Below, piece after piece: positions 1 through 50,642 of a stretch of 64,000 nt of DNA. Each line of letters begins with the position of its first letter. Within the stretch, counting starts at the first letter, position 1. The notes under the pieces are model-generated. The model worked only from the letters and a program-made list of their open reading frames with translations. It made no database searches and was not told the DNA's origin. The translations under genes were made by a program, and so were the position numbers. The DNA is from Lytechinus pictus (taxonomy: Eukaryota): assembly GCF_037042905.1 (NCBI RefSeq), contig NW_026974140.1, positions 19,468,001-19,532,000 of the forward strand, in the 5' to 3' direction.

Positions 1-156
1 CCACGACCACGTTATTTTCCATTATATAACAGCGTAAGGGACCTCGATAACGAGTATACTACTATAGCCGTCATCCGAGCCCCACACACGTGCGAATGCT
101 GGGACAAGCGCATTGGACGGGGCCAGTTTCGCGACTATCTTAGGATGCAAGCTTAA

Positions 157-400
157 TATATACTCGTGATATAGGCCCCGCTACTGTGTTGGAGTGTCTG
201 AAGTGCCGTAGTGCGGGGCCTATATAACGATTATAGTACTTTACTCGTGAAACAGGCCCCGCAAACGGACATTCTAAGCCATTCAACACAGCAGCGGGGC
301 CTATATCACGAGTATATATAGTGAGCTGAAGTTAGCAACCTAGATATTGAGGTAGTATAATCGATTACAAGTTTTTCTCGAGCGGGGCCTATATCACGAT
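157..400. repeat. Cluster of five TCGTGATATAGGCCCCGC-like motifs, mostly in alternating orientation
   Basis: Copies near 164 (+), 213 (-), 246 (+), 294 (-), 382 (-); 157-191 is the near-perfect reverse complement of 284-318. Confidence 0.8.
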
Positions 401-41975: not shown

Positions 41976-44082
41976 CTGCAGGAAATAAGATTTAATAAGG
42001 AAAGAAAAGAGAGGAGATTTAAAATAGAAAAAGAAAGTTCACCCTCAAGAATATTGGGGCCTACATCATTTTACGGGCTTGTATATCAAACAAGAAAACA
42101 AATCTTAAAAAATAAGATTAGCAATTATGAAACGTAAAAAAAAATAAAAAAATATGTAAATATAATTTTGATTGGATTCCTAATGAGATAAAGATAAAGA
42201 ATCACGTTCCCTTCTATTATAAAACAACAACAACAACAACTAAAATACATCAACAATAAGCCCTTTAAGAACCACATTTTCCCATCTGTCGTGTTTAATC
42301 ATAAAAGAATATATATTCTGTTTTAGAAAGAGCCTCTCAAAATTATTTTCATACCCTAAAATTATATCTGAATACTATAGCCTTTTATAGGCCTAAGGCA
42401 TCTTTCACAATCTAAGTTAACAGACACACACAGAGGGTGACCTATGCTTTAATTCATTGGAGCATTCAACATGATGTATCGCGTTATCTTTTCAGTTCCC
42501 TTGTGATTTATATATAATACATTGATATCAAGTGATAGGTGTAAACGAGAATATATATTTATCAAGTCAGTGTATAAGAGTCCAGTGCAATCCCATCAAG
42601 TAAGGATTTTCATCCTATAGTCATAACTATAGCCTGATTGTTATACACTATCTTTATCCCGTATTAAAAAAATCTATAGTCCATATTCGTGAAATATATT
42701 TCTTAAAAAAATATTATTGTCTACATTTGTCATATTTTTTTTACAGTCAGCTAATTGATTACATGTTTTGAGTGGAAAACCAATAGGTCTACCATTTAAC
42801 ACTAGTAATTCCTATTTTCGCTGTTCATACAAATCCTTAATTTCTGAATGGTTCGATAATTCAATAACCTCGCCCCCCTCATATAATACAATTCGATTTG
42901 ACATGTAGAATGATCGTTATCTGAAGTAGATTGTAAAGTACTATTTTACATCGCTATTAACTTAGTACATATTCAAAATCTGTGTAATATAATACATTGG
43001 TTTATCAATGTAATTTGCTTCTGCTATATTTGTAATTATTTATCAATAAAGTTAATGAATATACTGAATTTCATAAATGTGTTATCATCAGCAGTATATA
43101 GTAATATATACTTCACCTTTACATGGCTATGTAGCTTTTATTTACTTTCCGTCTGAAAATAATAGAGATCACTGCGCAAGTCATTGTGCCATATAATGCT
43201 GACCTGAAGTGAGATTCTATCAAAAGTTTAATGATAATATCTTGTTTTACAGTACACTGAAAGCAATTCCTATTTGTATATTTTCACTATATATTCATAT
43301 TTCTTATAATTTAGCCCCCATTATACTGTTACAATCATGGCAGTGTCCCCCCTTTTTTATTTATGTCTTTTATTAATTCAAATGCAATCACATGCACTAT
43401 CACAAATAATCAAGGCAAATTGTGCTTGATTCCCTTTTTATTTTTTCAATTTCATTACGTACATTTTAGCATAGATTGAATGTGTAACTCGTTAGTGGGA
43501 ATTAATGGTCAAATCTAATTTATATTACATTGCTTACAAACTGCATTCATTTTGAGATTTCACTGCATGATGATAGGGAATTTGGTAAGGAAAAATTTGG
43601 CAAGCAAAAAAAAAGTTATTGCTCCCAAATCTCCGTCATTTGGGAGCAATAAAATCTTTCTTGTCAACCTGATTTCAAGGAGGTACTGCCTATGGTAAAT
43701 AACACACGCAGCATCCCCTGAAAAATCATGGGGGGGGGGGGTACCCCCACCACCCTTGCCTCCCAGGGCAATGCACTAGAATAAATATATTATTCCCATA
43801 ACTATGTTGAGAACTAAATATTATTCTATTGCCAGTTTGTCACTTTTCCTCATTTTTGTCTTTATTTTGAACCACCAGCAGTCTGACAATAATATTTTCA
43901 TATATTATCACATAACACCATTTTTTATTTAGAAACAGATAGAATATTTTGGCCTAATATTGACGCATTATGTACCGATTACAATATAACTACTTGAAGT
44001 ATATATTCCAAGATATGCAGTATAAAGGATTTAAAAATACATTTTTAAATCTAAAAATAATTAGCACTATTGTGAAACATAC

Positions 44083-45696
44083 CAAATCCCATATGAACGC
44101 TGGTGAAGACTGCTTGCAGTGTTAAGGCCAGACCTGGTGGTGCGTTCTGATTGGCATAGGATGTACAAGCGGCCCAAGATAACCCATAGGTGATTCCATG
44201 TAAAAGCTCAAAAGGTATGACTGCCCAGGGATTGCTGATTAGGGAGTATCCTAAGAAACGTACAGTATAGCAGAATAATGAGAAGCAGAGAGCTCCTATA
44301 TGACCAGTGAAGCGTATAACACGGTTAGATAAAAACAAGAAGGGTATCTCTGCAATACAGGTGATAGTAAGTGTCAATCCCATCAGGGTATGAGATGCTT
44401 CAAGTTCTTGAAGATACAGGAAGAGGAATGTTCCAATGACTCCAAAACCCATCCCTAGGATACAGACTGTCACCAGGAATCCTAGGATCTCGGGTTTGCG
44501 GATGAGTCTTGGTATCCTTTGGCACTGTGCTTTGATTGAAGTCTGTAAAGGGAAGACGATAAAAGTTGCAAATACCACCGCGGCCAGCATGAAGGCGAGG
44601 AATAGATAGAATGCAGGATCAAAATGTGCTAGGCTCTTGGATGAATTCCTTGCGTAGTGGTCAATGAGAATACCAGAGATAAGAGAAAAGGCGCCCCATC
44701 CGAAAGCACCCCAGATACGCTGCTTACCAAAGTCATCATGTTTTTGTTGCAGTAATTCCATTGTCGTTGAGTGAAGTATTGGGGAGGTGGTGCATTGGAA
44801 CGTCCTGCTAAACAATATCAAAATGAGCAAGAGAAAAAACGTGGAGAGGAAAGTTGAATCACCATGATCTCTTTCACTTCCTTCAGGTTCGTACTCATGG
44901 CAGTGACATGAGAATGAATGCTGTGTTGCATCACTAATATTCAGGTAAGAGACAAGCGAAATATTAAAAGACGTTGAATTCGTCAAAGGATTTCCGTTAC
45001 TTCTTGAACACCATACATCAGCTTCGTTGTACCTTATATCATCTGACTGTTTTTGGTATATAACTGGTTCACATTGGTAACAAGATGAACCACTTTCCTG
45101 AGAAAAAGAATCATACGCTTCTCCACTATCATTACATCCACTAGTTCTGTTGACACTGACCATCTCTTGTTGAAGGAAACACAGAGTTTGTAAACAAGAT
45201 TCCTCTCTCATCGCTGACGTAGAGTTGTCTTCTACCGTGCCCCTATTTTTCTCACATGATAAACTGTCATTGAGTGCTCTACAAACACTGTAACAGATAC
45301 CGATCCTTGCACCACTGTCATCCTCTAATTGCACTGTCGGTGAAATCTCATTCAAGTACGGTGGAAATTCTGTTACATCCATTGGATGCAAAAGGTCTGA
45401 AGTCCTAAGACTGGGCACATCTTGATCGACAGGTAACTGTGTGGTGATGTTATGATATGCCCCTATTCTCATAGAAGATGGAACAAAAAAGGTCCCAAAC
45501 AGGAATACTGTGGCACCCCCTATGGCTGTAATGAGCACGGCTCTATGGGTGTTAAAGCTATCAGCAATGCTTCCCCATAAGTGTGTAAAGATGAGGGCTA
45601 GGAGTGGTTCCAGACCTCTGATTAAACCGATCTGTGTCGCTGAAAGACCAAGTTGACTCATGTATAAAGGCAAGTATGGTACCAAGCTAGCCAAAC
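44083..45696 (-). CDS. MFSD6-like coding exon 2 (1614 nt)
   Basis: ttgtcttctag|GT TTG...TTT G|gtatgt. PYLPLYMSQLGLS, WGSIADSF, FGKQRIWGAFGWG, FLFLYLQELEAS, AEIPFLF, ELLHGITYGLSW are MFSD6/MFS_1-like motifs; large Cys- and N-glycan-site-rich loop after TM3. Confidence 0.95.
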
Positions 45697-45758
45697 CTAG
45701 AAGACAACGGGGAAACAATAAATAGTAATACCATTTATCCATTACATTAACATGGTGA

Positions 45759-45816
<58 letters not shown>

Positions 45817-45969
45817 GTGTGACATTATACATGTACAACAGCTTTGGCAACTCTTTTATTTTAATATTTTGTTAAATAAATGGATGAAGAGAACAATGGT
45901 AGGCGTAGCTTAAATCAAGGTTCCCCAGAGCTATCTGCCTTTTTGGAAATATTGGTAATGCCGAAAAAA

Positions 45970-46041
45970 TGTCTCTGCCGGGAATCGAACCCGGGCCCCC
46001 AGCTTTGAACGCCGGTGCCTTAACCACTAGACCACAGAGAC
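45970..46041 (-). tRNA. Inverted identical tRNA-like (TCA) copy
   Basis: Reverse complement of 46345-46416. Confidence 0.6.
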
Positions 46042-46344
46042 GGGTTAGTGGCTAGGGCGACCCCGATCCGATTGACCATCAGATAGACAGATCTTCGACA
46101 CTATACCAATTATAATTTCCTTTGTCGGGTGTAGGTGGGTTTTGAACAATGACAAGCCGCCATGCCTCAGCTGGATCAAAGCTACATTGCTTTGATACAG
46201 TACACGTATAGGGGAAAGTATACAAATGTGTGACATTATACATGTACAACAGCTTTGGCAACTCTTTTATTTTAATATTTTAAAATATCGAAGATCTGTC
46301 TATCTGATGGTCAATCGGATCGGGGTCGCCCTAGCCACTAACCC

Positions 46345-46416
46345 GTCTCTGTGGTCTAGTGGTTAAGGCACCGGCGTTCAAAGCTGGGGGCCCGGGTTCG
46401 ATTCCCGGCAGAGACA
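46345..46416 (+). tRNA. tRNA-like gene with TCA anticodon (opal-suppressor-like or pseudo-tRNA) inside a repeat unit
   Basis: Acceptor GTCTCTG/CAGAGAC, D arm GTCT-AGTGGTTA-AGGC, anticodon arm CCGGC-GTTCAAA-GCTGG, variable GGGC, T arm CCGGG-TTCGATT-CCCGG, discriminator A, then T6. A and B boxes intact. Function unproven. Confidence 0.6.
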
Positions 46417-46755
46417 TTTTTTCGGCATTACCAATATTTCCAAAAAGGCAGATAGCTCTGGGGAACCTTGATTTAAGCTACGCCTACCATTGTTCTCTTC
46501 ATCCATTTATTTAACAAAATATTAAAATAAAAGAGTTGCCAAAGCTGTTGTACATGTATAATGTCACACATTTGTATACTTTCCCCTATACGTGTACTGT
46601 ATCAAAGCAATGTAGCTTTGATCCAGCTGAGGCATGGCGGCTTGTCATTGTTCAAAACCCACCTACACCCGACAAAGGAAATTATAATTGGTATAGTGTC
46701 GAAGATCTGTCTATCTGATGGTCAATCGGATCGGGGTCGCCCTAGCCACTAACCC

Positions 46756-46827
46756 GTCTCTGTGGTCTAGTGGTTAAGGCACCGGCGTTCAAAGCTGGGG
46801 GCCCGGGTTCGATTCCCGGCAGAGACA
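46756..46827 (+). tRNA. Second identical tRNA-like (TCA) copy, 411 bp downstream
   Basis: Same sequence as 46345-46416, followed by T6. Confidence 0.6.
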
Positions 46828-46949
46828 TTTTTTCGGCATTACCAATATTTCCAAAAAGGCAGATAGCTCTGGGGAACCTTGATTTAAGCTACGCCTACCA
46901 TTGTTCTCTTCATCCATTTATTTCACAATATATATATTTATATATATAT

Positions 46950-47649
46950 AAACTCCTAACAAAAGTTTGGAAATCTGAGTTTGGCCATTAATTTTTCCAA
47001 ACTCCCAACTTTACACAATACATGTATGATATCATTAAAAAGATCATTTAATTGTCTTTAAAATGATATCCTACATAATATGATTATGGTTCACATGGAG
47101 GTGCAGTGCCTTGAAATGTGGGGCAAGTTCAAAATTCAAAAGTTGCAAAATGTCACAATATTGAAAGTCACTGTTCGTTTTTTTATGTGGTGATGAGTGA
47201 GTTTCTCAGCGGTTTCTTTTGTTGTCATGCACCTTAACATCAACATTAACATGGAATCAAACACACCTCTGCACAAGCAAACACATAACAAACAAACAAA
47301 CATGCATGGGTATTTCAAACCACGACTCAAACCATCTCTCAGATCTCCATGTTAATGTTGATGTTAAGGTGTATGAAAAAAAAAAGAAACCACTAAACTC
47401 ACTCATCACCACGGAAAAAAAGAACCGTGACTTTCAATAATATGTTATTTTGCAACTTTTGAAGTTTGACATTGCCCCACATTTCAAGGCACTGCACCTC
47501 CATGTGAACCATAATTATATCATGTAGGGTATCATTTTAAAGAGAATTAAATGATATTTTCATTGGTATCAATCACACATTAATTTTCACTAAAACTGAG
47601 GAGGGATCATCGATCAGAGTCAGATTTCCAAACTTTTTTTGAAGGGTTT
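46950..47649. mobile_element. Near-palindromic MITE (Tc1/mariner-like) in a TA tract
   Basis: aaaagtttggaaatctga / tcagatttccaaactttt ends; long inner inverted arms (ggttcacatggaggtgcagtgccttgaaatgtggggcaa and its reverse complement). Confidence 0.8.
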
Positions 47650-48597: not shown

Positions 48598-48649
<52 letters not shown>

Positions 48650-48885
48650 CATTTCTTTCACAAAATATTTAAATAACAGAGTTGCCAAAGCTGTTGATCA
48701 TGTATCATTTCACACACACACACACACACACCCACTCACACACACACACACATATATATATCTATTTATACATATATAACGATATTACTTTCCGCGTGTT
48801 GGACACAGATGAGATAAAAGAGACAAAGAGGTCATGCATTGTAGTTCCAACAAAGTTTAAATAAACTTTGTTGGAACAACTTCTT

Positions 48886-49030
48886 NNNNNNNNNNNNNNN
48901 NNNNNNNNNNNNNNNNNNNNNNNNNNNNNNNNNNNNNNNNNNNNNNNNNNNNNNNNNNNNNNNNNNNNNNNNNNNNNNNNNNNNNNNNNNNNNNNNNNNN
49001 NNNNNNNNNNNNNNNNNNNNNNNNNNNNNN
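48886..49030. other. Assembly gap (N run)
   Basis: Direct reading. Confidence 1.
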
Positions 49031-49368
49031 AGAGAACAATGGTAGGCGTAGCTTAAATCAAGGTTCCCCAGAGCTATCTACCCTTTTTTGGAAAAATTGG
49101 TGATGCCGAAAAAATGCCTCTGCCGGGAATCGAACCCGGGCCCCCAGCTTTGAACGCCGGTGCCTTAAACACTAGACCACAGAGACGGGTTAGTGGCTAG
49201 GGCGACCCCGATCCGATTGACCGTCAGATAGACAGATTTTCGACACCATACCAATTGTAATTTCCTTTGTCGGGTGAAGGTGGGTTTTGAACAATGACAA
49301 GCCGCCATGCCTCAGCTGGATCAAAGCTATTGCTTTGATACAGTACACGTATGGGAGAAAGTATACAC
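49031..49368 (-). mobile_element. Further copy of the 411-bp tRNA-containing repeat, cut by an N gap
   Basis: Colinear with about 45888-46224, scattered substitutions; followed by (TA)n. Confidence 0.85.
49115..49186 (-). tRNA. Diverged tRNA-like (TCA) copy
   Basis: Same fold and anticodon; one acceptor-stem change giving a T-G wobble and one D-loop G>T change. Confidence 0.45.
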
Positions 49369-49408: not shown

Positions 49409-50642
49409 TTTTGATAATATGAGTTTTACTGGAATATCCATATTCTTTTGTAACCTTTACCGAAGGCTTAGTATATATATATATATATTTATATACACAC
49501 TAAGCGTTCGGTGAAGGTTACAGAAGAATATGGAAATTGCAGTAAAACTCATATGTCAAAAGTTAATTTGAAAGAGAATGCAGAATTCTTAAAGCCTATT
49601 TGTACCTTGGGTTTGATTCATCTGAACTTTAGATACAATTTGGAACGAATTTCTCACTTACTGATCGATTCAATGGTATAAGAAACACCTAAAATTATCA
49701 GCAATCATTTCAAGACTTCAAAAATATTATAAAGTACAAAAAAGAGAAGAAAATTGAATAATTGTGCGAAGCATCTCCTTGCTATTCAAATTCAAAGTTT
49801 GCACAAATGTGTCAATTATTGTGGCTGCAAAGTTAGCCTTGATATTGACACACACCCCGAAGTAGAGAAAAAGAAAGCAAGAAAAATATTGAAACACCTA
49901 TTTGTTTTAGAACTGCATGCTTTTTTGCGTTTACTTTGGTAAGCATATTATTATCTAATTCCGACTACCGCGTTAACAAATAACTAATCCCCCTCTCTCC
50001 ACTCCTCTCTCTCTCTCTACCTTTCAAGATGACATTTAAAATCAATACCTAAATCCGTGATGCGAAATCAGTCCAGCTGTCTTTCAATAATGACCAGACT
50101 GATGAAACATTGATTGACATTTCAAGCTTAAAAGAAACCGACCATTCACCGTATACGTAAACATGTGGACCTATATAATCAGGTAACTTGGTTGCCATTA
50201 CGATCTGCTATATGCCTACCAAATTTTTTAGTCCACCAAAATCAGAATTATCCACACTCTCATACATTCCCACAATCATGGCTATCTGGATTTGAATTAA
50301 TCCAAGGATTTCGAATTCATAAACTTGCAAGGATAGTCTAATTATCGTACTTGTGCATAAACAGTTTTTATTTCATATTTTATAATGCCCGATGTATATT
50401 CATTAAAGCTATTAATGTCAGTACAAATTTGACCAAAATAGCGCAATATCAGTACCACATTTTTTAAAATTCTATCTAATCTATATAGCCTTTAGAGTTA
50501 AATAACCCTAATTTAGACATTTTTGATATGTAATACCACAACCTTCTGCTAGAATTTCACTCTAAAGTTTACGAATCTCTGATAAATCTAGAATAATGAC
50601 CAGCTTAAAATTTGATTTATTTTGAATCTCATTTTCAAAGCA

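What the first reader, a model, noticed from the sequence alone, without database searches (positions are those of the whole stretch)
45813..46927. Mobile 411-bp element carrying a complete tRNA-like gene with a UCA (UGA-reading) anticodon
Seen: a 72-nt cloverleaf with all four stems paired, intact A/B boxes, anticodon loop GT-TCA-AA, a 4-nt variable loop and T6 directly after the discriminator. It sits mid-unit (about 182 nt of element upstream, 157 nt downstream), in three identical copies here and a diverged fourth at 49115 that keeps the anticodon. Known: tRNA-derived SINEs have the tRNA at the 5' head and read through into a body, and tRNA-Sec has a long variable arm and a different stem geometry; this fits neither. 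The D and T arms resemble eukaryotic tRNA-Glu, but the acceptor and anticodon stems differ and still pair, which suggests the fold is maintained. Inference: a selfish element carrying its own Pol III tRNA cassette, acting as an opal suppressor (for example for a partner retroelement with in-frame UGA), a processing signal or an RT-recruiting structure. Caveat: G32 is non-canonical, and TTC one base 5' may be a slipped Glu anticodon.
Basis: partly seen in the sequence, partly recalled or inferred. Interest (0 to 1): 0.88.

Follow-up and report, generated by a model that had tools for sequence, protein, structure and literature searches.

The report
tRNA-carrying retroelement repeat, not a suppressor
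The UGA-reading tRNA look-alike is real, but it belongs to a roughly 410-base mobile repeat present thousands of times in this animal genome, its copies decay like junk DNA, and so it is most likely a transposon passenger, not a working stop-codon suppressor.

Summary
A 72-nt cloverleaf with anticodon TCA, a 4-nt variable loop, G32 and a T6 run occurs four times in the window (Rfam tRNA 60.9 bits for three copies, 54.4 for the fourth).

It is the consensus module of a ~410-bp repeat family with at least 2,300-2,900 copies in this 812-Mb genome. The scan noted the same family on another piece of this genome (s1-311753).

In 60 loci chosen by a flank sequence:
- 3' ends sit at two fixed points and are always followed by (TA)n.
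- 5' ends are scattered, some inside the tRNA.
- 14 head-to-tail unit junctions are near-exact (10 with no gap).
- Head-to-head inverted pairs outnumber tail-to-tail pairs 32 to 4.

This is the insertion signature published for Penelope-like retroelements, Naiads in particular. No ribozyme was found.

The unit is itself a decayed head-to-head dimer. Its left arm is an inverted relic of the tRNA 3' half plus trailer, and the whole RNA folds as a rod (z = -8.1). That explains why the tRNA sits mid-unit.

Copies mutate freely: 4 of 48 tRNAs are intact, no stem pair shows a compensatory change, and older copies carry TCC.

Verdict: a non-autonomous retroelement with a passenger tRNA-like Pol III cassette. 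Suppressor function is unsupported but not excluded. Expression was not testable.

The parts
45763..45812 (.). (AT)25 microsatellite next to the 3' end of the left (- strand) arm. It is the target or tail repeat.
   Evidence: TRF; sequence
45813..46223 (-). Full unit (family positions 1-410) on the - strand. Its 3' end faces outward to the (AT)n.
   Evidence: BLAST to the unit, (L001 coordinates + 45073); 97.3% identical to the family consensus
45970..46041 (-). tRNA-like gene, anticodon TCA. Its T6 run is at 45964-45969.
46224..46281 (-). 58-nt partial unit (positions ~355-410) joined head-to-tail to the full - strand unit. This is a partial tandem.
46282..46287 (.). Head-to-head inversion junction with a 6-nt filler, where the 5' ends of the two arms meet.
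46288..46573 (+). 5'-truncated unit (positions ~126-410) on the + strand.
46345..46416 (+). tRNA-like gene, anticodon TCA. Its T6 run is at 46417-46422.
46574..46933 (+). Unit positions 1-361, ending at the proximal of the two family 3' end points and running into (TA)n.
46756..46827 (+). tRNA-like gene, anticodon TCA. Its T6 run is at 46828-46833.
48648..48716 (+). Solo 69-nt fragment of the 3' end of the unit (88% identical) between (TA)n and (CA)n. This is an extreme 5' truncation.
   Evidence: the repeat finder D5/I6
49031..49367 (-). Fourth copy (95-96% identical), cut on its 3' side by the N run 48887-49030 and followed by (TA)n on its other side.
49115..49186 (-). tRNA-like gene of the fourth copy, with two substitutions and anticodon TCA kept.
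   Evidence: (54.4 bits)

Best explanation
The tRNA-like gene is the consensus module of a young, ~410-bp, non-autonomous retroelement family with thousands of copies. The family spreads by target-primed reverse transcription into (TA)n tracts, in the manner described for Penelope-like elements of the Naiad type. An RNA with a fixed 3' end is copied from a nick in (TA)n. Copying often stops early, which gives random 5' truncation. It often continues onto a second template, which gives exact head-to-tail partial tandems. The opposite DNA end often primes a second, inverted copy, which gives head-to-head pairs. The present unit is a fossil of such a head-to-head event: its left arm is a decayed inverted copy of the tRNA 3' half plus trailer. 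That places the tRNA mid-unit and makes the full-length RNA a rod. The tRNA cassette has a Glu-type D arm, the Gly/Glu-type T arm, A and B boxes and a T6 run. It came along as part of the ancestral monomer. Its anticodon drifted from UCC to UCA in a source copy that then amplified. Individual copies are not under selection. Shown: family size, insertion anatomy, the inverted relic, neutral decay, and the anticodon history. Inferred: the RNA intermediate, dependence on a Penelope-like element, and lack of suppressor function.
For: Copy number, from own-genome pattern counts with at most 2 mismatches in 31 nt: 2,342 for the tRNA anticodon arm, 2,860 for the 3' flank and 1,998 for the 5' flank.
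Insertion anatomy in 60 loci chosen by the flank:
- 86 of 108 arrays end at consensus positions 353-366 or 393-410.
- 5' starts are spread over the whole unit.
- There are 32 head-to-head junctions against 4 tail-to-tail.
- All 22 simple insertions have (TA)n or (CA)n(TA)n after the 3' end, and some begin inside the tRNA.
- 14 head-to-tail junctions occur in 12 loci, 10 of them with 0 nt between the units.
These are the features Craig et al. 2021 list for Naiads, including the (TA)n preference (PMC8557442). A GIY-YIG endonuclease ORF family of the Penelope-like kind exists here, with at least 339 candidates and open frames up to 810 aa. One 5'-truncated copy shares a (TA)n tract with the element.
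Inverted relic: unit positions 102-167 align to the reverse complement of about 223-278 with score 43, against 19.5 +/- 3.0 for shuffles (0 of 1000 as high). The unit RNA folds at -148.5 kcal/mol against -102.9 +/- 5.6 (z -8.1). One pair co-varies between subfamilies (GC 16, AU 6).
Neutral decay of the tRNA: 4 of 48 copies intact, 0 compensatory pairs, and 95.9% of stem cells paired against 95.7% when shuffled.
Anticodon history: TCC in 5 of the 13 most diverged copies and in 1 of the 46 younger ones (Mann-Whitney p 0.005).
Against: - No autonomous partner that shares sequence with the unit was found. The one Penelope-like 3' region examined shows no similarity.
- The two 3' end points are about 45-50 nt apart, a little more than the published 30-40-bp tail.
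- The consensus tRNA is unusually perfect for a transposon module: 60.9 bits, acceptor stem fully paired, T6 kept.
- Variants shared between subfamilies are somewhat rare in the tRNA (2 of 30 sites against 5.3 expected, p about 0.08). Non-CpG substitutions are lower there than in the flanks (2.8% against 4.2%). Some constraint on source copies is therefore possible.
- RNA-seq was unstranded and cannot capture tRNAs.
Confidence: 0.65

Rival explanations
1. The cassette is a working opal suppressor. Intact copies are transcribed by Pol III, charged, and read UGA, for example to let a partner retroelement with in-frame UGA be translated.
For: The cloverleaf, A and B boxes and T6 are complete. A36-A37-A38 suits a tRNA that reads codons beginning with U (general knowledge). 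2,015 copies keep the exact TCA anticodon arm. Naiad elements of clams and spiders do carry 3-4 in-frame UGA codons (PMC8557442). There is a weak hint of constraint on the tRNA in source copies.
Against: G32 is almost never seen in decoding tRNAs (general knowledge). The acceptor stem matches none of the canonical tRNAs I recalled from memory; this genome's acceptor stems were not retrieved. The anticodon was TCC in older copies. Copies decay without compensation. The published UGA-bearing Naiads have SECIS elements and so use the selenocysteine machinery. Intact copies of the Penelope-like endonuclease family here have no in-frame stops. Thousands of active suppressor genes would probably be harmful.
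Confidence: 0.05
2. The tRNA stands in for the hammerhead of a retrozyme. RNase P and RNase Z cut multimeric transcripts at each tRNA to release unit-length RNAs, possibly circularised, which serve as transposition intermediates.
For: The size, tandem habit, low-GC flanks and rod-like fold resemble metazoan non-LTR retrozymes (150-450 bp; 350-390 bp in mussel; PMC7229834). No ribozyme is present to do the job. Naiads also lack hammerheads.
Against: Cutting at the tRNA would remove it from the template, yet genomic copies contain it. The 3' ends lie near positions 360 and 410, not at 181 or 254. 5' starts do not pile up at 182 or 255. No read ends pile up at the tRNA borders in RNA-seq (weak evidence). 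In the predicted full-length fold the tRNA is sequestered in the rod.
Confidence: 0.12
3. It is an ordinary LINE-dependent SINE-like retroposon with a microsatellite tail (for example of the RTE or CR1/L2 kind), not dependent on a Penelope-like element.
For: Fixed 3' ends, 5' truncation and simple-repeat tails also occur with several LINE clades. Twin priming gives 5' inversions (general knowledge). No Penelope-like partner was identified.
Against: About 59% of arrays sit in head-to-head pairs, and exact head-to-tail partial tandems occur in 12 of 60 loci. This fits the Penelope-like description far better than LINE insertions do. The (TA)n preference matches Naiads.
Confidence: 0.13
4. It spreads at the DNA level, as satellite DNA via extrachromosomal circles, or as a Helitron, or as a Helenus-type miniature LTR element.
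For: One array of at least 44 units with a 406-bp period lies at C2:8.866-8.884 Mb. Helenus elements with tRNA-like LTRs, predicted suppressor tRNAs and tandem arrays are known in animals, including bivalves (PMC10886601).
Against: Random circle insertion would not give fixed 3' ends. There are no fixed 5' boundaries, no TG...CA LTR ends and no 4-bp duplications. No Helitron-type 3' hairpin with a CTRR end is present.
Confidence: 0.05

Closest known systems
Penelope-like elements of the Naiad clade: insertion architecture (Craig et al. 2021, PMC8557442)
   Same: Strong 5' truncation, partial head-to-tail tandems (pseudo-LTRs), an inverted 5'-truncated copy at the 5' end, an optional short tail extension, a preference for (TA)n, and no hammerhead.
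   Different: The unit is 410 bp and non-coding (Naiads are 3.4-4.4 kb with reverse transcriptase and GIY-YIG). No sequence shared with an autonomous element has been shown. It carries a complete tRNA-like gene.
Metazoan non-LTR retrozymes (Cervera & de la Pena 2020, PMC7229834; Li et al. 2026, bioRxiv 10.64898/2026.07.22.740005)
   Same: Non-autonomous tandem units of a few hundred bp with low-GC flanks and thousands of copies. They are thought to derive from or depend on Penelope-like elements. The RNA is highly self-complementary.
   Different: The defining type I hammerhead is absent. A tRNA-like cassette is present instead. Circular RNA was not tested.
Helenus / TRIMp3 elements (Kojima 2024, PMC10886601) and Cassandra
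   Same: Non-autonomous retroelements that carry a small-RNA gene (tRNA or 5S) away from the 5' end. They inflate tRNA predictions, including suppressor types, and form tandem arrays. The author judges them unlikely to encode functional RNA.
   Different: Those are LTR elements with a primer-binding site, a polypurine tract and 4-5-bp target duplications. This family has no LTR boundaries and shows target-primed signatures instead.
tRNA-derived SINEs
   Same: A tRNA-related Pol III module, a fixed 3' end, 5' truncation and high copy number. The ancestral monomer (tRNA plus about 157 nt) may have had the tRNA at its head.
   Different: In the present unit the tRNA is 181 nt from the 5' end. A T6 terminator follows it directly, so Pol III cannot transcribe the body from this promoter.
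tRNA-Sec and natural opal suppressor tRNAs
   Same: The anticodon is UCA and the loop reads U33-UCA-A37-A38.
   Different: It is 72 nt with a 4-nt variable loop and a 7/5 acceptor/T geometry, not about 87-90 nt with a long arm. It has G32. It is part of a repeat, not a conserved single gene.

Membership tests
Functional cytoplasmic tRNA gene | Cloverleaf with four stems and the conserved D-loop and T-loop nucleotides | tested here: met
   RF00005 at 60.9 bits with all stems paired; ARAGORN
Functional cytoplasmic tRNA gene | Internal A and B boxes and an oligo-T terminator | tested here: met
   TGGTCTAGTGG, GGTTCGATTCC and T6 after A73
Functional cytoplasmic tRNA gene | Pyrimidine at position 32 | tested here: not met
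   G32 in the consensus and in the old TCC copies
Functional cytoplasmic tRNA gene | Purifying selection or compensatory change across copies | tested here: not met
   4 of 48 intact; 0 compensatory pairs and pairing equal to shuffles; divergence 5.1% against 6.0% for flanks
Functional cytoplasmic tRNA gene | A processed, CCA-tailed, aminoacylated RNA | not testable with these tools
   Only unstranded standard RNA-seq was available; no RNA holder on record
tRNA-Sec | Long variable arm, extended acceptor/T geometry, about 87-90 nt | tested here: not met
   72 nt with a 4-nt variable loop; the best model in the clan is RF00005
tRNA-derived SINE | tRNA-related head at the 5' end whose promoter transcribes the whole element | tested here: not met
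   The tRNA is at positions 182-253 of 410 and T6 follows directly. The left arm is an inverted relic, so the ancestor may have been head-first
tRNA-derived SINE | 3' tail shared with a partner LINE | not tested
Non-LTR retrozyme | Short tandem units of 150-450 bp | tested here: met
   410-bp units, from partial copies up to at least 44 in a row
Non-LTR retrozyme | A type I hammerhead ribozyme in each unit | tested here: not met
   No ribozyme family at E up to 1 or up to 10 in the Rfam scans
Non-LTR retrozyme | Expression as circular RNA | not testable with these tools
   Needs RNase R treatment, divergent RT-PCR or long reads
Non-autonomous element dependent on a Penelope-like element (Naiad-type insertion) | Strong 5' truncation with fixed 3' ends | tested here: met
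   86 of 108 arrays end at two points and 5' starts are spread evenly
Non-autonomous element dependent on a Penelope-like element (Naiad-type insertion) | Partial head-to-tail tandems | tested here: met
   14 junctions in 12 of 60 loci, 10 of them exact and the rest within 4 nt
Non-autonomous element dependent on a Penelope-like element (Naiad-type insertion) | Inverted 5'-truncated copy adjoining the 5' end | tested here: met
   32 head-to-head against 4 tail-to-tail junctions; the window itself
Non-autonomous element dependent on a Penelope-like element (Naiad-type insertion) | Insertion bias for (TA)n | tested here: met
   22 of 22 simple insertions
Non-autonomous element dependent on a Penelope-like element (Naiad-type insertion) | Optional 30-40-bp tail at one end | tested here: inconclusive
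   The two 3' end points are about 45-50 nt apart
Non-autonomous element dependent on a Penelope-like element (Naiad-type insertion) | Sequence shared with an autonomous element that encodes reverse transcriptase and GIY-YIG | tested here: inconclusive
   A GIY-YIG ORF family exists, but the one 3' region seen has no similarity to the unit. Other families could not be fetched.
Helenus (miniature LTR element with a tRNA-like LTR) | Two LTRs with fixed ends, a primer-binding site, a polypurine tract and a 4-bp target duplication | tested here: not met
   No fixed 5' boundary; (TA)n after every 3' end

The most novel reading that the evidence does not exclude
Source copies keep an intact Pol III tRNA(UCA) cassette because it serves the element. 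It might supply UGA read-through for a Penelope-like partner whose ORF carries in-frame UGA, as selenoprotein-coding Naiads do. Or it might recruit tRNA-processing enzymes in place of the hammerhead that other elements derived from Penelope-like elements use.
Probability: 0.07. Interest if true: 0.85.

Novelty: new variant of a known kind. Interest (0 to 1): 0.42.

Why it matters
1. More than 2,000 "suppressor tRNA" or "tRNA-SeC" calls in this genome are transposon modules. They should not be counted as tRNA genes or read as evidence for recoding.
2. Within the papers searched, I found no description of a short non-coding element that has the Penelope-like/Naiad insertion signature and carries a complete tRNA gene in place of a hammerhead. 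This element would extend the small-RNA modules found in retroelements (5S in Cassandra and Ajax, tRNA in Helenus) to this class.
3. The unit shows how a head-to-head insertion product can itself become the amplifying unit. The result is a rod-like RNA with the former 5' head buried in the middle.
4. Hundreds of intact Pol III cassettes dispersed near genes could matter as TFIIIC/Pol III binding sites. One sits about 75 bp upstream of an MFS transporter ORF in this window. This is untested.

Tried and rejected
- Searching papers for the exact tRNA sequence found nothing.
- RNA-seq raw reads were unstranded. Depth over the element was 20-170 (both read orientations summed) over about 2,900 copies, against 2-5 on the neighbouring gene. 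Depth follows genomic copy number and no ends mark the tRNA borders, so the result is uninformative for a 72-nt RNA.
- Both searches for sequencing runs found no holder on record as RNA.
- A diverged TCC variant seen in RNA reads is absent from the assembly at up to 3 mismatches.
- Parent tRNA. The D arm equals this genome's tRNA-Glu and the T arm equals its tRNA-Gly-UCC, but the anticodon stem matches neither. The acceptor stems of this genome's canonical tRNAs were not retrieved. No single parent could be named.
- Partner element. A GIY-YIG ORF next to one copy led to a family of the Penelope-like kind, but its 3' region is unrelated to the unit.
- The Helenus, Helitron and circle-derived satellite readings were rejected on end structure.
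- Hammerhead and other ribozymes: none found.

Full report
**Observation.** The window holds four 72-nt tRNA-like sequences with anticodon TCA, at 45970-46041(-), 46345-46416(+), 46756-46827(+) and 49115-49186(-) (ARAGORN). Infernal scores the first three at 60.9 bits (E 7.6e-12) and the fourth at 54.4 bits on RF00005, whose gathering score is 29. All four stems pair, the variable loop has 4 nt, and the anticodon loop reads G32-U33-UCA-A37-A38. TTTTTT follows the discriminator directly. The first three tRNAs are identical; the fourth has two substitutions. ARAGORN's "SeC" label reflects the anticodon only, because the molecule lacks the long arm and the geometry of tRNA-Sec.

**What it belongs to.** The tRNA occupies positions 182-253 of a ~410-bp repeat. 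A DNA search of the window's own 812-Mb genome gave 1,302 first-look candidates. Pattern counts with at most 2 mismatches in 31 positions gave:
- 2,342 for the anticodon arm through the T stem
- 2,860 for a 3' flank segment
- 1,998 for a 5' flank segment

The exact 19-mer around the anticodon occurs 2,015 times with TCA and 19 times with TCC. One array on contig 2 has at least 44 units with a 406-bp period. Most loci hold between a fraction of a unit and three units. The scan noted the same family on another piece of this genome (s1-311753).

**Insertion anatomy.** I fetched 60 loci chosen only by an exact 31-mer of the 3' flank. They hold 108 arrays.
- 86 arrays end at consensus positions 353-366 or 393-410. 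These are two end points about 45-50 nt apart, each just after a TTTCACA motif.
- 5' starts are spread over the whole unit.
- Sequence coverage falls from about 94 copies near position 320 to about 20 at positions 1-20.
- All 22 simple insertions have (TA)n or (CA)n(TA)n after the 3' end. About half also have (TA)n upstream. Several begin inside the tRNA.
- Fourteen head-to-tail unit junctions occur in 12 loci, 10 of them with no nucleotide between position 410 and position 1.
- Thirty-two junctions join two arrays by their 5' ends (head-to-head), against four joined tail-to-tail.

The window's own stretch is such a structure: two arms of more than one unit each, 5' ends joined at 46282-46287, 3' ends facing outward into (TA)n.

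**Comparison with known elements.** Craig et al. 2021 describe exactly this combination for Penelope-like elements and for Naiads in particular. They list a high degree of 5' truncation, partial tandems that form pseudo-LTRs, an inverted 5'-truncated copy adjoining the 5' end, a 30-40-bp tail at one end, no canonical hammerhead, and (TA)n as the preferred target (PMC8557442). Metazoan non-LTR retrozymes are tandem units of 150-450 bp thought to depend on Penelope-like elements, but they are defined by a hammerhead (PMC7229834; 2026 preprint). Rfam scans of the window stretch and of a near-consensus dimer found only the tRNA and no ribozyme. Helenus elements carry tRNA-like sequences in their LTRs, inflate tRNA predictions including suppressor types, and occur in many animals (PMC10886601). 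This family lacks fixed 5' boundaries and LTR features, so it is not a Helenus.

This genome does hold a repeated GIY-YIG endonuclease ORF family with at least 339 candidates and open frames up to 810 aa. One 5'-truncated copy shares a (TA)n tract with the element. Its 3' region is unrelated to the unit, so the autonomous partner remains unidentified.

**Why the tRNA is mid-unit.** The near-consensus unit RNA folds at -148.5 kcal/mol, against -102.9 +/- 5.6 for shuffles (z -8.1), as a rod in which the left arm pairs with the right arm. Positions 102-167 align to the reverse complement of about 223-278, which cover the tRNA T arm, the 3' acceptor strand, the T run and the trailer. The score is 43, against 19.5 +/- 3.0 for shuffles (0 of 1000 as high); the direct orientation scores 20. 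The unit is therefore a decayed head-to-head dimer: an inverted 5'-truncated copy fused to a direct copy whose tRNA was at or near its head. One pair of the rod co-varies between subfamilies (GC in 16 copies, AU in 6, AC in 6). That is too little to claim selection for the fold.

**Is the tRNA maintained?** At the level of copies it is not.
- Only 4 of 48 flank-selected tRNAs equal the consensus. Substitutions and deletions hit stems and loops alike.
- On 43 aligned copies no stem pair shows a double-sided change. 95.9% of cells are paired, against 95.7% in shuffles.
- Divergence is 5.1% in the tRNA and 6.0% in the adjacent flanks (p 0.04). Non-CpG substitutions are lower in the tRNA (2.8% against 4.2%) and CpG substitutions are higher (7.0% against 4.4%).
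- Variants shared by several copies number 2 in the tRNA out of 30 overall, where 5.3 were expected. This is a weak hint of constraint on source copies.
- One of those two shared variants is the third anticodon base. TCC occurs in 5 of the 13 most diverged copies and in 1 of the 46 younger ones (p 0.005).

The family therefore seems to have begun with UCC and switched to UCA in a source copy that then amplified.

**Origin of the tRNA body.** The D arm is identical to this genome's tRNA-Glu genes, and the T arm is identical to its tRNA-Gly-UCC genes. The anticodon stem matches neither. G32 is present throughout the family.

**Expression.** Three raw RNA-seq runs gave unstranded depth of 20-170 (both read orientations summed) over the element, summed over thousands of copies. 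The neighbouring MFS gene had depth 2-5. The profile follows genomic copy number, and no read ends mark the tRNA borders. Such libraries do not capture tRNAs, so Pol III expression remains untested. No run on record as RNA holds the sequence.

**Verdict.** This is a non-autonomous retroelement with Penelope-like (Naiad-type) insertion behaviour. It carries a passenger tRNA-like Pol III cassette whose UCA anticodon is a lineage accident. The suppressor idea is attractive, given the UGA-bearing Naiads in clams and spiders, but it is unsupported here. Those Naiads use SECIS elements, the endonuclease family seen here has no in-frame stops in its intact copies, and the cassette has G32 and a drifting anticodon. 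The processing-signal idea conflicts with the positions of the 3' and 5' ends. What remains open is the partner element, the promoter of the full-length RNA, and whether intact cassettes are transcribed.

Noticed in passing
L019:951-1385 (-) = G000:C21:6403722-6404153: A 144-aa ORF with a GIY...YIG motif (Pfam GIY-YIG only at E 0.044). It belongs to a repeated family with at least 339 candidates, several subfamilies and open frames up to 810 aa, which suggests endonuclease domains of Penelope-like elements. This copy is 5'-truncated, begins right after a (TA)n tract shared with the tRNA element, and is followed by an inverted fragment of its own start.
   Followed up: partly
window 47027-47571: A foldback or MITE-like element with 157-nt inverted arms (89% complementary) 231 nt apart. 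RNA-seq depth of 50-100 and many variant reads show that it is multi-copy.
   Followed up: no
window 49417-49554: A near-perfect hairpin palindrome (69-nt arms, 88%) embedded in (TA)n. It gives miRNA-family hits below threshold (mir-5014 at 62.5 bits against a gathering score of 101), which are probably artefacts of the hairpin.
   Followed up: no
window 44051-45850 (-): An intronless 599-aa ORF of the MFS_1_like family (E 4.5e-79). Its start lies about 75 bp from the (AT)25 tract and the tRNA element, so the array sits in its promoter-proximal region. RNA-seq depth is 2-5.
   Followed up: partly
G000:C2:8866144-8883635: At least 44 tandem units of the tRNA element with a 406-bp period, all with an intact anticodon arm. 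This satellite-like array could be a source locus. It could not be fetched.
   Followed up: no
G000:C13:22.08-22.16 Mb; C17:25.857-25.881 Mb; C16:2.593-2.599 Mb; C4:9.70-9.74 Mb: Clusters of canonical tRNA genes: 26 tRNA-Gly-UCC, about 30 tRNA-Glu-CUC, tRNA-Glu-UUC at ~386-bp spacing, and a dense cluster of 45 or more tRNA genes of unread type.
   Followed up: no
dispersed, e.g. G000:C3:12350193, C6:14576026, C8:39893495: A second dispersed tRNA-Glu-like family whose 5' half reads TGGTCTAGTGGTTAAGATTCTCGTCTTTCAA. These are probably heads of a tRNA-Glu-derived SINE. The first-look count of 73,101 tRNA-like candidates suggests that the genome is rich in such elements.
   Followed up: no
RNA reads laid at window 46344-46449 (table 5c): Reads carry a diverged relative of the tRNA 5' half with anticodon TCC. 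It has no match in the assembly at up to 3 mismatches, so related copies differ between individuals or strains.
   Followed up: partly
window 48887-49030: A run of N cuts the 3' part of the fourth copy, so its end structure cannot be read.
   Followed up: no
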